Below are positions 10,621 to 29,339 of a DNA stretch of 35,603 nucleotides, in pieces; within the stretch, counting starts at the first letter, position 1; each line of letters opens with the position of its first letter. The notes under the pieces are model-generated. The model searched no databases, was not told the DNA's origin, and was given only the letters and a program-made list of their open reading frames with translations. Source of the DNA: Aplysia californica (lineage: Eukaryota); assembly GCF_000002075.1 (NCBI RefSeq), contig NW_004797279.1:1840642-1876244 (forward strand), given 5' to 3'. A program made the translations under genes and the position numbers.

Positions 10621-11986
10621 CATGCAACGTCATCATCAGAAACCAACCAGGAGCAGAGCAGCTCCAACTCTGTCAGTTGTATTTACAAAATTTATAGTTC
10701 CTGTTATTTCAAGATTTATGACTAAATTATAGAGCGCTGAAAGATGATGTTTAAAAAAAATAATATTAGAGTTTTGAGATAAAAAATGAGGCCTTTGCTA
10801 GAATTTCAACAAAATTAGAATAAACGAAGCAAGTTGAAAGAGAGGAAAGGGCACTTTCAGATGAATATTAAGTAAAGGGCAAAATGAAACTGGCCAGATT
10901 GCTAACGACCCATCAAGCCAACAACCATCAATCGACTGGAACAGGTAAGAATAATGGTCTTTCTGTGAAGATGTAAGTGAAGATCCCACTAAAGAAATTC
11001 GCTGGCTGGCGTTATACCCTCTGTTATACTTAAGGCAGTCCGTTTTTGCGAATGTAGAAATTGGTACGCTCCATCACGGACTTCTGTTGGAGAAGATTTT
11101 GTCGCTGACCGGAATACGTCACTGTAATTTAACCCCCCAAAAAACCACGACCTTTGTGCTCTCGCTCTGAGCTTGTGTTCATCCTTTGTTTCAAAGATGT
11201 TAATGAGATCAAAATTGTCTCAGGTCGTCAAGGAAAAGGTTTAATCAGCACCAAGAAAGACACCTTTTGCTCAACTTAGTTCTTTAAGAATACAATGTAC
11301 ATAGATTTGTCAAACAGATAGACAGAATCTCGTTGTTTTTCAGGTTATAATATNNNNNNNNNNNNNNNNNNNNNNNNNNNNNNNNNNNNNNNNNNNNNNN
11401 NNNNNNNNNNNNNNNNNNNNNNNNNNNNNNNNNNNNNNNNNNNNNNNNNNNNNNNNNNNNNNNNNNNNNNNNNNNNNNNNNNNNNNNNNNNNNNNNNNNN
11501 NNNNNNNNNNNNNNNNNNNNNNNNNNNNNNNNNNNNNNNNNNNNNNNNNNNNNNNNNNNNNNNNNNNNNNNNNNNNNNNNNNNNNNNNNNNNNNNNNNNN
11601 NNNNNNNNNNNNNNNNNNNNNNNNNNNNNNNNNNNNNNNNNNNNNNNNNNNNNNNNNNNNNNNNNNNNNNNTAATATAGGTGGGCAAGAAGAGGGTAATT
11701 GGTCCCAACACAAACGCAATCATAGAAAAACTTTTCTACTTTTAGTGTTAGTCAGCTGACAAAAGCCCAAAGAATACGAGCATAATTATAATCAAGCAGA
11801 TATAATATTACAGTATAGGTTCGAGCAAAGTTACTGGCCCGAGTCTTACTGTAGGCAGGAGGGAGATGGCTACCTGTCTTGAACCTTTAGACGTTTCAGT
11901 GTTGTTAGTTAACAGATTTACAGACTGACTGATTGTCGATTGAGCAAGTCGTCTAATTTATGTAACCTCTCAACTCTTCCACTGAC

Positions 11987-12144
11987 CTAACTCCTATCGT
12001 GGGCATGAGGAAGGTGGCTAGTCCCGTCATCAACATGGTGGCACTCAGCAGGTGTGCCTTGATAGACTCCTCTTGTGTGGCGCACACGATCTCAGACACG
12101 ATGACAGCCTTGCTCAGAGGGGATGCGATGCACAACAGGCATTG
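11987..12144 (-). CDS. SLC23: SLC23 paralogue A, coding exon 2 (QCLLCIASPL...GLATFLMPTIGVR)
   Basis: gtacAG acceptor, AG|GTCAGT donor, 158 nt (phase 0 to 2). TM1-TM2 region, resembling GxxTxLQxxxGxR. Confidence 0.92.
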
Positions 12145-12279
12145 CTGTACAAAATGTCAGAAGGGGGGGGGGTGCGGGGGTTGTTAAGGGGTGCAGGGTG
12201 TCGGAGAAAAAGGGGATAGGATAGGGGAAGGGGCAGTTGATGGTTATAGACAAAAGCATTTTTGCATAGGTGGCGGTGG

Positions 12280-12323
12280 TGATGATGATGGTGATGGTGA
12301 CAACGACGACGACGACGACAGTG

Positions 12324-12371
<48 letters not shown>

Positions 12372-12375
12372 CGAC

Positions 12376-12408
<33 letters not shown>
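12280..12408. repeat. (GAT)n/(GAC)n microsatellite
   Basis: Direct observation. Confidence 0.95.
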
Positions 12409-12409
<1 letters not shown>

Positions 12410-13273
12410 CCGGGTAGTCGTCCGAAATATCAGCGTAAAAAATTATTCATCAATAAAAGACCTAAATTTTTAAGCTTCAAGAGGTACTGCAAAGGTACAT
12501 ACAAATAATTAAGACTGGTGATACATTCGAACACATGCCATAATTCTGCAGTTTTCCTGTTTCAACTACAGTACCTTGAAAATGCCAATTATAAGTGACT
12601 TTAGTACAATGTTTGTATGGGTCTGTTTGGAAACTGAATTTCCGTTGAAAGAGGAGCCTTTAAATGCTCTTACAACTGCATCTAAGATGCGTGATTGTTT
12701 TCAGTTAAGGTTTGAACCTGGTCCTGTGAGCCACATTAATACGCCTGTCTATACTTAATGTAGCCAATTTGAAAGATGAGCATTAGTTGTTCCCCATCCA
12801 GGATAAACGTCCGTGGGAATATTTTTCAATAAGAGCTAGAAAACTGAACTTATTATAACCAATATAACTGAAATCTCGCACTCCCAAACCTGAGATAAAA
12901 ATCATAATCTCCCGTGAAAAATCAAGACGCTAGGTTAAATGTAGTTAACAAAAAACAAACAAATAAACAACAACAACCCTATGGGTTGTGTAAGTCTTGG
13001 GTTCCTCCTGTTCTGTTATTTGAAGTCTCTCCAAGTCTGATATTGTACATGCATGGCGAACAATAAAACGAGGGCATCTGGCTGTGATAACGATTATGTA
13101 GAGGATAAGGTTGGACGTGGCTAGAATAGAAAGCGCCTCTCCCCCTTTTTGTGTGATCAAAAGTGTACCTGCTTTTCAACAAATCAGCAGAAGGACAAAT
13201 CATTCTCTACAGTAACTGATTTTGTATTTTATAAGGACATTTTGGAACGCCCATCACAAACGCAAGCCTTTAC

Positions 13274-26417: not shown

Positions 26418-27168
26418 GATGAAAATAATCCTTCATTAATTTGCGTCTCAGGGGCATTTGTATTAATTTTCTGTTTTTTTTAAAGCTTTGCCTTACAGAC
26501 AAAACATTATAAAGGATGCCAAATTTAAACCTTAAGTTTAGAAATTTCGAAAGCATTCCTTGGAAGTGGTTACATGTAATAATTCATTCAACGTTGAAAC
26601 TATAAAGGATATAATTTCACAAAATAACGTCCACCTTCCACCTTTTATAATTCTGACTGGACATCCGCGTGTCACTCAGACAAAATATATTGAAGTGACG
26701 ACGTGGTCATAAAATTGCTTTCCATTTGCTTTCAGGTTTAGCCAGGTTTCTTCTGTGGTGTCTTTAAAAAAGTGTCGAGCTGAACCCGAAATAATTGGCG
26801 AGTAATCCTCTTGAGTGGGTTTTAGCCCTTTAACGCTTTTCTTTGCTGGCTGGATTACATTTCGAGTGTCTCCTTTTTATGCTATTTTGTAAAAAGTAAA
26901 GTAAAGAATGAACTTTGGCTTGCGAATTTTAGTCTATACATGTACATATCATTCACTCTGTCTAAAACAAAAGGTTTAATGGAACATGGTTGCAATGGTC
27001 AAACCTAAAGTGTTTCTTAACTTACGTTTATTCATTCTTTGTGGCCGTTACATGGCTGATGGCCGTGTATGTAGGATTACGGCTAAGTTGAGCAATTTTG
27101 CCTTGTATGAAATGGACGCAGATTCAGTTGCCTTCTTGGGATGATATTTAATTAAGTATTTCAAGTTT

Positions 27169-27169
<1 letters not shown>

Positions 27170-27224
<55 letters not shown>
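27170..27224. repeat. (TATC)n tetranucleotide repeat
   Basis: Direct observation. Confidence 0.95.
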
Positions 27225-28019
27225 ATGTGTTTGTGACGCTAGGCAGGGTCAAAGCCGTTTATCTCCCGAATAATCTAAACCTGGTCACGGGGGCTTATGA
27301 AGTTGCCACTTCGCAAATTAATTTTGAATCTACCCAAAATGTGGAACTCATATTTGAACACTTGTTTCCACAATGTCAGAAATGCAACATTGCTCATTCG
27401 AAGGTCCTACTAAGAGCAATATGTTCAACAGTTTCAAGGTAATTTGTCACGTGGTCAGTTATGTAATGCAAATACGAACAGAGCACTGCTCACATTTTAA
27501 CAGCTACCAAGGAAGAGAAAGCCCCATTGTTCCAAACATACCCGGAGCAGGAGGCAATACATTAAGATGGCCTCAAAGGACTGACTTCCTAGGCGCAAAC
27601 GCCTATATATAATCACTGACGTGCTGAAAGTCAGTTAGAGATAATCATATCTCTCCTGAACATGCTAGGGGACATACCATTGTTGGCATCCTGGCATCTA
27701 CCTGCAAAAACATTGCCCCAAAACATTGATCAAGACGCCAATCACCCTGCAGCCCATGGCAATCTGCAAGAAAAAAAGGACCCCCCCACACACACACACA
27801 CATACACACACACACTCACACAGAGCGAGNNNNNNNNNNNNNNNNNNNNNNNNNNNNNNNNNNNNNNNNNNNNNNNNNNNNNNNNNNNNNNNNNNNNNNN
27901 NNNNNNNNNNNNNNNNNNNNNNNNNNNNNNNNNNNNNNNNNNNNNNNNNNNNNNNNNNNNNNNNNNNNNNNNNNNNNNNNNNNNNNNNNNNNNNNNNNNN
28001 NNNNNGACAGAGAATGGGA

Positions 28020-28108
28020 AAACAGACAATAGTGTGTACCACTTCTTAATTGATTTTAAAAAAGTGTTTGTCACAGTATATGGTATGACTCAATATGAGC
28101 ATAATTAA
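28020..28108 (+). mobile_element. Short LINE reverse-transcriptase fragment
   Basis: VYHFLIDFKKVFVTV resembles the RT motif FIDFKKAFDSV. Confidence 0.5.
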
Positions 28109-28470
28109 GGTTTACAGTATCGAACAAAAGCGAGCAACCCCCCTCAAAAAAAACAACCTACTAAAAAACAACAACAACAACAATAAAACAACAACCCACT
28201 AAGCAGCTCTTCGCCTATTTAGAGATCACAGTACTTGTCCATGTTAGACCCGGAGACTGGTTCCACACGAACTCATTAGAGTCCGCCAGGGTTACCTTGT
28301 CTCCACTTTCCCTTTCTATATCTTTCTTGATATGGTTATGAGTGATGATCTTGAAGACTAAGTAGATGGCATAGCCCTTAGGTATACAAAGACGAAATCT
28401 ATAGCAAAGGTTTTCTCGACTGTTATCGCTTTTATCCTCTGCCCCTTGTCTCGCTTCGTGTCCATTACAG

Positions 28471-28628
28471 CAATGCCTGCTGTGTATCGCATCCCCTCTG
28501 AGCAAAGTTGTCATCGTGTCTGAGATCGTGTGTGCCACACAAGAGGAGTCTATCAAGGCACACCTGCTGAGTGCCACCATGTTGATGACGGGACTCGCCA
28601 CCTTCCTCATGCCCACGATAGGAGTTAG
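28471..28628 (+). CDS. SLC23: SLC23 paralogue B, coding exon 2
   Basis: ttacAG acceptor, AG|GTCAGT donor, 158 nt; 6 mismatches to the reverse complement of 11987-12144. Confidence 0.93.
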
Positions 28629-29339
28629 GTCAGTGGAAGAGTTGAGAGGTTACTCTTTGGTAAATCTGCAGTCTCTCAATTGATCAAGATACAGCTACTT
28701 TTACATTTCTGATCTCTCTCACTGTCTATCCATTAGCGGCACTTTGTTTCTGAAGAGTTCGTTATTTTAGTCATACCAACCACAGGAGTAAGTAATAGTT
28801 GAAGGATTGGTAAATTGGAAACCTTGCTCTCTTCCAATGCCTACTTTTTCTTGTCTTTAACTTTGAATTATTACACTGTTGTAATGTTCCCGAGGAGCCC
28901 CCCAGCACCGGGTGTTATACATTTTAACTAACAAATAGCAATTTTGTAACAAAAAATATTATATCCTTTCTGTCTCCTAGACAGGAAAAAATGATTAATG
29001 GCAGGTTGAGAAATATTCTTATTGTGCTTGGACAGAACTTTAGATTTCCGCTCTTTGGCCCACTTCGTAACCAAATTAGATAAGTAGGATTACTTGGATT
29101 TACTTGGATCCAGGGCTAGAATCATAGCAGGCGACACATGTCATTAGCTGCTCATCTCTCCTTTTCAGCGTCCACCTCAGGGTCTTCCTGCTAATTGTCT
29201 CCATGAGGAGCTGGTTTGAGACACACCTGACCACTCCTAGGAGCAAACTTTTTTTCGCTGTGCCCCGAACTCACTGACGCTGTCGCTCTTGAACGTCGTG
29301 AACAACACGGGCCACTTCAGTCTGACGTTCTGTAGTATC

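What the first reader, a model, noticed from the sequence alone, without database searches (positions are those of the whole stretch)
11962..28653. Exon-scale gene conversion between old, inverted SLC23 paralogues
Seen (hand counts): A versus B identity is ~88% for the 3' 108 nt of exon 1 (13 differences), ~96% for exon 2 (6/158), ~67% for exon 3 (31/95) and ~73% for exon 4 (26/98). Third positions in exons 3-4 look near saturation, so the duplication is old. Yet exon 2 is almost identical, and identity runs 25 nt into the intron (gtcagtggaagagttgagaggttac at 11986-11962 and 28629-28653). I saw no other long intron match. Inference: repeated ectopic conversion, perhaps favoured by the inverted arrangement, has homogenised the TM1-TM2 exon while TM3 and the extracellular loop diverged.
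Basis: partly seen in the sequence, partly recalled or inferred. Interest (0 to 1): 0.75.

Follow-up and report, generated by a model that had tools for sequence, protein, structure and literature searches.

The report
Gene conversion patch between sea-hare transporter paralogues
Two neighbouring, oppositely oriented copies of a vitamin-C/nucleobase-type transporter gene in the sea hare Aplysia californica are old and well diverged, except for one 188-base patch that one copy has most likely copied from the other; this process, gene conversion, is well known.

Summary
Two head-to-head SLC23 (PF00860) genes share a 188-nt block (11962-12149 minus, 28466-28653 plus). It covers 5 nt of acceptor, the 158-nt exon 2 and 25 nt of intron, with 6 mismatches. 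Eleven other comparable exon pieces are 65-86% identical.

- **Silent sites:** exon 2 has pS 0.13 (dS 0.14) against 0.57 (dS about 1.07) elsewhere, Fisher p = 1e-7. Four-fold sites agree at 26/27 against 79/164.
- **Permutation:** 0 of 20,000 shuffles give so clean a 158-nt window.
- **Introns:** beyond the block the introns are at random identity (22-27%).
- **Constraint is unlikely:** exon 2 is ordinarily divergent between species at protein level. There is no RNA structure signal and no Rfam match.
- **Artefact is unlikely for copy B:** contigs from three other samples reproduce its junctions.

Best reading (about 0.8): short-tract interlocus gene conversion between lineage-specific inverted paralogues. 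It was probably recurrent, because exon 1's 3' part and exon 7 show intermediate dS (about 0.48).

This is a new example of a known process, so interest is low to moderate. The scan's index held no similar note.

The parts
11962..12149 (-). Converted block, copy A: 5 nt of acceptor, exon 2 (12144-11987) and 25 nt of intron 2
28466..28653 (+). Converted block, copy B: 5 nt of acceptor, exon 2 (28471-28628) and 25 nt of intron 2. The six A/B differences lie at 28480, 28485, 28506, 28508, 28533 and 28596
   Evidence: junctions seen in contigs of three other samples
13274..13498 (-). Gene A exon 1. The 3' 123 nt (13396-13274) are 86.2% identical to B with dS 0.48. The 5' 102 nt are 57.8% identical with pS 0.58
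25755..25994 (+). Gene B exon 1. The 3' 123 nt (25872-25994) are the part similar to A
9238..9332 (-). Gene A exon 3, 67.4% identical to B, pS 0.89
31813..31907 (+). Gene B exon 3
8681..8778 (-). Gene A exon 4, 73.5% identical to B
33618..33715 (+). Gene B exon 4. B's later exons lie beyond the window end
7993..8069 (-). Gene A exon 5, 71.4% identical, pN 0.09 but pS 0.79
7065..7169 (-). Gene A exon 6, 64.8% identical
6283..6391 (-). Gene A exon 7, cut by the gap at 6153-6282; 86.2% identical, dS 0.48. Candidate older conversion
5631..5787 (-). Gene A exon 8, 76.4% identical
3090..3175 (-). Gene A exon 9, first 86 nt only (82.6% identical). Homology to B stops at 3090
1258..1422 (-). Gene A exon 10, 75.2% identical
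28006..29813 (+). Contig island between two N gaps that carries B's exon 2; the stretch on which public runs were laid

Best explanation
The window holds two SLC23/NAT-family transporter genes of Aplysia californica. Gene A is on the minus strand and gene B on the plus strand, head to head, with their exon 2 copies 16.3 kb apart. They arose by a duplication in the Aplysia lineage, after its split from the panpulmonate snails, and have since diverged to near saturation at silent sites.

A short non-reciprocal transfer between the two loci (interlocus, or ectopic, gene conversion during repair of a DNA break) overwrote one copy's exon 2 and the first 25 nt of the following intron with the other copy's sequence. 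Six point differences, five of them transitions, have accumulated since. On the silent-site scale the last event dates to roughly 6-13% of the age of the duplication.

Shown: the sharply bounded block, the silent-site and intron identity, the statistics, and the reality of copy B in other individuals.

Inferred:
- The repair mechanism itself.
- That conversion was recurrent. Homologous repair needs similarity that an exon left alone since the duplication would have lost, and exon 1's 3' part and exon 7 look like patches that stopped converting earlier.
- That tracts are exon-sized because only exons keep enough homology.
For: 1. **Block.** One 188-nt ungapped block at 96.8%, flanked by 22-27% identity. 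Only these two copies exist in the 927-Mb genome.
2. **Silent sites.** Exon 2 has Sd 5.0 of S 39.2 (dS 0.14), against 174.3 of 306.5 (pS 0.57, dS 1.07) in the 11 other exon pieces; Fisher p = 1.0e-7. Four-fold sites agree at 26/27 against 79/164. Transitions to transversions are 5:1 against roughly 1-2.7:1 elsewhere.
3. **Intron.** The donor-side intron is 25/25 identical, against 4-12 of 25 at the other ten scorable donor-side flanks (eight true donors plus two non-donor positions, after exon 9's break and inside exon 12).
4. **Permutation.** 0 of 20,000.
5. **Not protein constraint.** The A-B amino-acid distance divided by the mean distance to five panpulmonate orthologues is 0.07 for exon 2 and 0.24-0.75 for the others. 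Exon 2's own distance to the outgroups (0.26-0.28) is mid-range. Exon 5 has low pN (0.09) but saturated pS (0.79), so protein constraint does not hold silent sites in this pair.
6. **No RNA element.** Fold z-scores are 0.11-0.35, and 0 Rfam matches at E <= 1 in 27000-29800.
7. **Copy B is real.** A 991-nt contig of run X9 spans 28200-29156, covering both junctions. X1 contigs cover 28200-28563 and 28624-29119 with 0 other letters. An X12 contig covers 28347-28528. No variant is listed at the six diagnostic sites.
8. **Lineage-specific pair.** A and B are sister in a 41-protein tree (SH-aLRT 100).
9. **Mosaic history.** pS is heterogeneous among the other 11 exons (chi-square p = 2.5e-4). Exon 1b plus exon 7a against the other nine gives p = 0.001.
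10. **Known phenomenon.** Conversion between adjacent inverted paralogues, with tracts reaching into introns, is described for C. elegans (PMC3966223, passages read).
Against: - The classic proof is missing. That proof would be exon 2 grouping by species while other exons group by orthologue; no species with both genes was available.
- Silent-site constraint on exon 2 could not be checked between orthologues because no orthologue DNA could be fetched.
- The 5' end of the block coincides with the exon edge to within 5 nt. A constraint on the exon would also give that.
- The 3' end lies in intron sequence with no homology beyond it. Simple homologous repair does not readily explain this.
- GC3 of exon 2 (0.67-0.71) is not distinct from exons 7-10 (0.61-0.86), so there is no clear mark of GC-biased conversion.
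X1's contig breaks at 28563 and 28624 fit a second copy sharing those words, but that is an inference.
- The one raw RNA run laid showed 0 reads on B's exon 2, so expression is unproven.
- The assembly is a gap-rich draft, and B's exon 2 island is joined to its neighbours only by scaffolding.
Confidence: 0.8

Rival explanations
1. Nucleotide-level purifying selection. Exon 2 and the first 25 intron bases would carry a sequence element, such as a splicing regulator site, an RNA editing or pairing structure, or an overlapping non-coding RNA. Both paralogues would then have kept it unchanged since the duplication.
For: The block is exon-shaped at its 5' end (within 5 nt of the acceptor) and includes the donor region. 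Silent-site constraint between orthologues could not be examined.
Against: - 26 of 27 four-fold sites across the whole 158-nt exon are identical, which needs a pervasive element.
- There is no excess RNA stability (z 0.11-0.35) and no Rfam match.
- At protein level exon 2 diverges ordinarily between species (0.26-0.28 to the outgroups, 0.22 between the two panpulmonate groups), so its codons do change over time.
- The six differences are mostly silent transitions, as in a young sequence pair.
Confidence: 0.08
2. Draft-assembly artefact. The island 28006-29813 would be a chimera or a misplaced piece, or one exon 2 copy would be an allelic variant of the other attached to the wrong introns.
For: - The island has N gaps on both sides.
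- 3.2% divergence lies within the range of allelic variation in marine invertebrates (recalled).
- The same assembly shows a suspicious join in exon 9 of A.
- Copy A was not checked against reads.
Against: - Contigs from three other samples, of 2013, 2019 and 2022, reproduce B's intron-exon junctions. One contig spans the whole block, and no run lists an A-type letter at any of the six diagnostic sites.
- The flanks of A and B are unalignable, so they are not alleles.
- Copy A shares an uninterrupted 2.4-kb piece with A's exon 1.
- Each gene needs an exon 2, and the genome holds exactly two.
Confidence: 0.05
3. The same copying outcome by another route: a replication-based template switch (microhomology-mediated), or a double exchange, pasted about 188 nt from one paralogue into the other in a single event, without recurrent homologous conversion.
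For: The 3' end of the block lies in intron sequence with no homology beyond it. That fits a non-homologous junction better than a homologous one.
Against: - The intermediate dS of exon 1's 3' part and exon 7 points to several events of homogenisation at different times.
- A clean in-register replacement of exactly the homologous segment is what homology-driven repair gives.
- Sequence alone cannot separate these routes.
Confidence: 0.07

Closest known systems
Interlocus gene conversion between adjacent inverted paralogues in Caenorhabditis (hsp16 modules, hsp70-7/hsp70-8, col-12/col-13, zim/him-8), as reviewed in PMC3966223 (passages read)
   Same: Linked paralogues in direct or opposing orientation. 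Identity is high in a bounded segment against diverged flanks. Tracts of about 100-200 bp and more sometimes reach into introns.
   Different: Here the introns are kilobases long and unalignable, so the tract is confined to a single exon plus 25 nt. The organism is a mollusc. The orthologue-based confirmation available for col-12/col-13 is missing.
Patchwork conversion in vertebrate gene pairs (gamma-globin HBG1/HBG2, red/green opsin exons, CYP21A2/CYP21A1P, SMN1/SMN2); recalled, not from a call
   Same: Short tracts homogenise some exons of otherwise diverging duplicates and give mosaic divergence along the gene.
   Different: Those pairs are young (a few per cent divergent overall) and mostly in direct orientation. 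A and B are near saturation at silent sites outside the patch.
Arm-to-arm conversion in large inverted repeats (Y-chromosome palindromes); recalled
   Same: The inverted arrangement allows intrachromosomal exchange without deletion.
   Different: Palindrome arms are kept >99.9% identical over tens of kilobases. Here only 188 nt of roughly 25-kb genes remain alike.

Membership tests
Interlocus (ectopic, non-allelic) gene conversion | A bounded segment between two paralogous loci is significantly more alike than the rest of the alignment | tested here: met
   188 nt at 96.8% against 65-86% in the other exons; 0 of 20,000 permutations
Interlocus (ectopic, non-allelic) gene conversion | The excess identity holds at silent and non-coding sites, not only at replacement sites | tested here: met
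   dS 0.14 against about 1.07, Fisher p 1e-7; four-fold sites 26/27 against 79/164; intron 25/25
Interlocus (ectopic, non-allelic) gene conversion | Phylogenetic incongruence: the converted segment groups paralogues within species and the flanks group orthologues | not testable with these tools
   A and B are a lineage-specific sister pair.
Interlocus (ectopic, non-allelic) gene conversion | Both copies are real loci and not assembly products | tested here: inconclusive
   Copy B's junctions appear in contigs of three other samples.
Interlocus (ectopic, non-allelic) gene conversion | The similarity is not explained by unusual constraint on the segment | tested here: met
   Met at protein level only: exon 2's distance to five outgroups is 0.26-0.28, mid-range, and the A-B to outgroup ratio is 0.07 against 0.24-0.75. 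Silent-site constraint between orthologues was not testable
SLC23 / nucleobase-ascorbate transporter family (Pfam PF00860 Xan_ur_permease) | Match to PF00860 above the curated cut-off | tested here: met
   P0215 (gene A) 147.4 bits and P0165 (gene B) 210.7 bits, against a cut-off of 27. Exon-wise matches on the same contig
SLC23 / nucleobase-ascorbate transporter family (Pfam PF00860 Xan_ur_permease) | NAT signature motif in the tenth helix (motif recalled, not from a call) | tested here: inconclusive
   B's exon 9 peptide ends in a stretch that fits the recalled motif. In A, homology stops at 3090 and that part is absent from the assembled sequence

The most novel reading that the evidence does not exclude
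The two transporters may be held identical in the exon for the end of the first and the whole second membrane helix by selection, not merely by chance conversion. One route would be a shared module the two proteins need, for instance for pairing with each other or a common partner. Another would be a nucleotide-level element spanning the exon-intron junction. The rest of the gene would then be free to diverge exon by exon. The graded dS series (exon 2 0.14; exon 1b and exon 7 0.48; exon 9 0.71; the others 0.8 to saturated) would record stepwise escape from concerted evolution.
Probability: 0.1. Interest if true: 0.5.

Novelty: new member of a known kind. Interest (0 to 1): 0.25.

Why it matters
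This is a clean, statistically strong example of exon-sized gene conversion between old paralogues with long, unalignable introns, in a mollusc, a group where few such cases are documented.

In practice it warns that trees, dating or selection tests on these two Aplysia SLC23 genes will mislead if exon 2 is included, and probably exon 1's 3' part and exon 7 as well. It also means short reads cannot be assigned to A or B within the block except at six sites.

It does not open a new question. The mechanism and its consequences are textbook.

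Tried and rejected
- **Other copies in the genome.** A DNA search of the genome found only the two known copies of the block. A mobile or multi-copy element carrying the exon is therefore rejected.
- **The 70-nt inverted pair at 18661-18730 / 21847-21916.** I first took it for a relic of the duplication, such as a leader exon or promoter. The aligned sequence looks like a tRNA-derived repeat (by eye), so I dropped it.
- **RNA structure or a known RNA family in the block.** There were no Rfam matches and no excess stability.
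- **GC-biased conversion signature.** GC3 of exon 2 is not distinct from the later exons.
- **Closer orthologues.** A whole-library search with B's exon 9 peptide and two word-index searches with database proteins found no sea-hare relative closer than the paralogue itself. A search with the translated exon 2 block found no candidate. That search sees only proteins of 35-110 aa, so a blank says little.
- **Literature.** Searches for 'gene conversion' with 'SLC23' gave 7 papers, none on this topic judging by title and abstract start. No claim of absence from print goes beyond that search. Supplements were closed and were not needed.
- **Earlier scan notes.** None mention gene conversion.

Full report
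**What is there**

The window is G000:C9:1840642-1876244 of a 927,310,431-base assembly in 4332 contigs. It carries two genes of the SLC23 / nucleobase-ascorbate transporter family (Pfam PF00860), arranged head to head.

- Gene A runs on the minus strand from its start codon at 13498 down past position 1.
- Gene B runs on the plus strand from 25755 past the window's end. I fetched the neighbouring stretches L001-L005 to see the rest.

A database protein named 'solute carrier family 23 member 2 [Aplysia californica]' (P0215, 563 aa) sits on a contig of 3,176,751 bases. That is the length of C9. It matches all 12 exon peptides I read from gene A at 100%. P0165 (638 aa, unnamed source) does the same for gene B. 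Both pass PF00860's cut-off (147 and 211 bits against 27).

So the organism is the sea hare Aplysia californica, and my exon edges agree with others' gene models. Exon-wise queries and the two database proteins stood in for that step.

**The observation**

The repeat finder and blastn give one ungapped inverted pair, 11962-12149 and 28466-28653. It is 188 nt long with 6 mismatches (96.8%), and 16,316 nt lie between the arms. It consists of 5 nt of acceptor, the 158-nt exon 2 (A 12144-11987, B 28471-28628) and 25 nt of intron.

Outside the block the next 100 nt are 22 and 27% identical, and gapped search finds nothing. The genome holds only these two copies.

**Divergence along the gene**

I compared twelve exon pieces, 1439 aligned coding nt with 316 differences.

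| Exon piece | Identity | pS | dS |
|---|---|---|---|
| exon 1, 3' part | 86.2% | 0.35 | 0.48 |
| exon 2 | 96.2% | 0.13 | 0.14 |
| exon 3 | 67.4% | 0.89 | saturated |
| exon 4 | 73.5% | 0.50 | 0.84 |
| exon 5 | 71.4% | 0.79 | saturated |
| exon 6 | 64.8% | 0.76 | saturated |
| exon 7 (cut by a gap in A) | 86.2% | 0.35 | 0.48 |
| exon 8 | 76.4% | 0.51 | 0.86 |
| exon 9, first 86 nt | 82.6% | 0.46 | 0.71 |
| exon 10 | 75.2% | 0.58 | 1.09 |
| exon 11 | 69.8% | 0.73 | 2.62 |
| exon 12, part | 76.5% | 0.49 | 0.78 |

- By Nei-Gojobori counting, exon 2 has 5.0 silent differences on 39.2 silent sites. The other eleven pieces have 174.3 on 306.5 (pS 0.57, dS 1.07). Fisher p = 1.0e-7.
- Replacement differences are 1.0 on 116.8 against 128.7 on 959.5, p = 3.4e-6.
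- Four-fold degenerate sites agree at 26 of 27 in exon 2 and at 79 of 164 elsewhere. The six differences are five transitions and one transversion.
- Shuffling differences within codon positions never gave a 158-nt window with so few differences (0 of 20,000; lowest 13).
- The donor-side intron is 25/25 identical for exon 2 and 4-12 of 25 for the other ten flanks that could be scored.

**Is it constraint?**

A tree of 41 gastropod SLC23 proteins was built. The 41 were chosen from about 300 returned. They comprised all hits named as heterobranchs, some caenogastropod, limpet and abalone rows, five unnamed Logan rows and three unnamed MetaClust rows (one of them P0165, gene B). Bivalves, a cephalopod, short fragments and two vertebrate-looking rows were left out.

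The tree puts A and B as sisters (SH-aLRT 100). The stem is 0.5 and the end branches are 0.22 for A and 0.41 for B. The sister clade is a single-copy panpulmonate group: Arion, Candidula, Lymnaea, Biomphalaria and Bulinus.

Against these five outgroups, exon 2 differs at 0.26-0.28 of residues, which is mid-range among the exons. The A-B distance divided by the outgroup distance is:
- 0.07 for exon 2;
- 0.24 for exon 1's 3' part;
- 0.41 for exon 7;
- 0.48 for exons 9 and 12;
- 0.62-0.75 for the rest.

So exon 2 is not an unusually conserved part of the protein. Exon 5 shows that low replacement divergence (0.09) goes with saturated silent divergence (0.79) in this pair.

The block has no excess RNA stability (z 0.35 for the block, 0.11 and 0.24 for the exon end plus intron in B and A). 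There is no Rfam match at E <= 1 in 27000-29800.

I could not measure silent divergence of exon 2 between orthologues.

**Is it the assembly?**

The four gaps named by the scan's program lie upstream of the two start codons or in B's intron 1. None touches a compared exon.

Exon 2 of A shares an unbroken piece (11672-14042) with A's exon 1. Exon 2 of B sits on an island (28006-29813) between gaps. I laid four public runs on that island. All runs carry the same coded organism label.

- **X9** (2013, no study named): one 991-nt contig covers 28200-29156, that is, the whole block with both junctions.
- **X1** (2022): contigs cover 28200-28563 and 28624-29119 with no other letters. The hole between them is the stretch that A and B share. 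Its edges fall 30 nt after the last B-specific site before it and 30 nt before the first B-specific intron base. I read that as a 31-letter word graph branching at a second copy, which is an inference. The second contig has 30 shared letters on the block's side, one short of the tool's bridging rule.
- **X12** (2019): a contig covers 28347-28528.
- No run lists another letter at the six diagnostic sites.
- **X21** (raw poly-A RNA): 0 reads on exon 2 of B. Only a high-copy repeat at 29043-29713 was covered.

Copy B is therefore real in several individuals. Copy A's junctions and the links across the gaps were not tested, and read laying allowed only one call.

**How it most likely works**

A break in or near exon 2 of one gene was repaired with the other gene's exon 2 as template. 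This left a non-reciprocal copy of about 188 nt.

With 5 differences on about 69 presumably neutral sites (silent sites plus 30 intron bases), or dS 0.14 on silent sites alone, against a background dS of 1.07-1.28, the last event falls at roughly 6-13% of the time since the duplication.

By then an unconverted exon would have been about 75% identical, with only short perfect runs. Homologous repair needs longer identity; this is established knowledge, recalled. Exon 2 was therefore probably homogenised again and again.

The intermediate values for exon 1's 3' part and exon 7 fit patches that dropped out of the process earlier. Both have dS 0.48, and together they differ from the other nine pieces at p = 0.001. 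Heterogeneity among the eleven pieces is p = 2.5e-4. Within exon 1 the 5' 102 nt have pS 0.58 against 0.35 in the 3' part.

Tracts are exon-sized because the introns offer no homology.

The 25 intron bases are the awkward detail. The tract ends where no homology follows. That would need either a non-homologous end to the event or a later indel in one intron. I could not tell which.

A long triplet microsatellite lies about 110-280 nt upstream of A's exon 2 (about 12258-12420). It could be a fragile site, but that is speculation. The role of the inverted orientation was not tested.

**Comparison and verdict**

Interlocus conversion between adjacent paralogues in either orientation is described for C. 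elegans, with tracts of a few hundred bases that can enter introns (PMC3966223, passages read). From recall, it is also described for many vertebrate gene pairs. Searches for 'gene conversion' with 'SLC23' gave nothing on this topic (7 papers, listing seen).

This is a new member of a known kind. It is a tidy case, useful as a caution for anyone dating or testing selection on these genes, and not surprising to a specialist. Confidence in conversion is about 0.8. The rivals are nucleotide-level constraint (0.08), another copying route (0.07) and assembly artefact (0.05).

Noticed in passing
window 2933-3175 and 473-634: Gene A's exon 9 loses homology to B at 3090, just before the part that in B carries the family's signature stretch. 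The sequence that follows (2933-3094) is a dispersed repeat with at least 40 copies in the genome at 72-87% identity, and a 98.8% identical copy lies 2.4 kb away at 473-634. Either a repeat inserted into the exon or the draft assembly made a false join. A's tree branch is shorter than B's, which argues against a dead gene.
   Followed up: partly
L003, window-equivalent 48203-49883 (C9 1888844-1890524): The exon that A has at window-equivalent -1460..-1582 (L002) has no counterpart in B. B has a 1.68-kb N gap just where it should lie. The database model P0165 fills that place with about 50 residues that look like translated intron (by eye).
   Followed up: partly
window 20169-21644 (+): A 491-aa open frame between the two SLC23 genes matches Sugar_tr (122 bits) and MFS_1, so it is an SLC22-like transporter. 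A and B are therefore not strictly adjacent.
   Followed up: partly
window 18661-18730 and 21847-21916: A 70-nt inverted pair at 80% identity in the intergenic region looks like two copies of a tRNA-derived repeat (by eye), not a relic of the duplication.
   Followed up: partly
window 29043-29713: A very high-copy repeat lies in B's intron 2. Summed contig depth is 10^4-10^5 against about 50 beside it in run X1, with many joints and loose ends. It is also the only part of the island with poly-A RNA reads.
   Followed up: no
window 13274-13396 / 25872-25994 and 6283-6391 (B partner at window-equivalent 41713-41821): Exon 1's 3' part and exon 7 have dS of about 0.48 and low A-B to outgroup ratios (0.24 and 0.41). 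They are candidate older conversion patches. Their intron flanks are at random identity.
   Followed up: partly
window 12258-12420, 32097-32157, 34402-34497: Long triplet (CAT/ATG) microsatellites lie in introns of both genes, one only about 110 nt upstream of A's exon 2.
   Followed up: no
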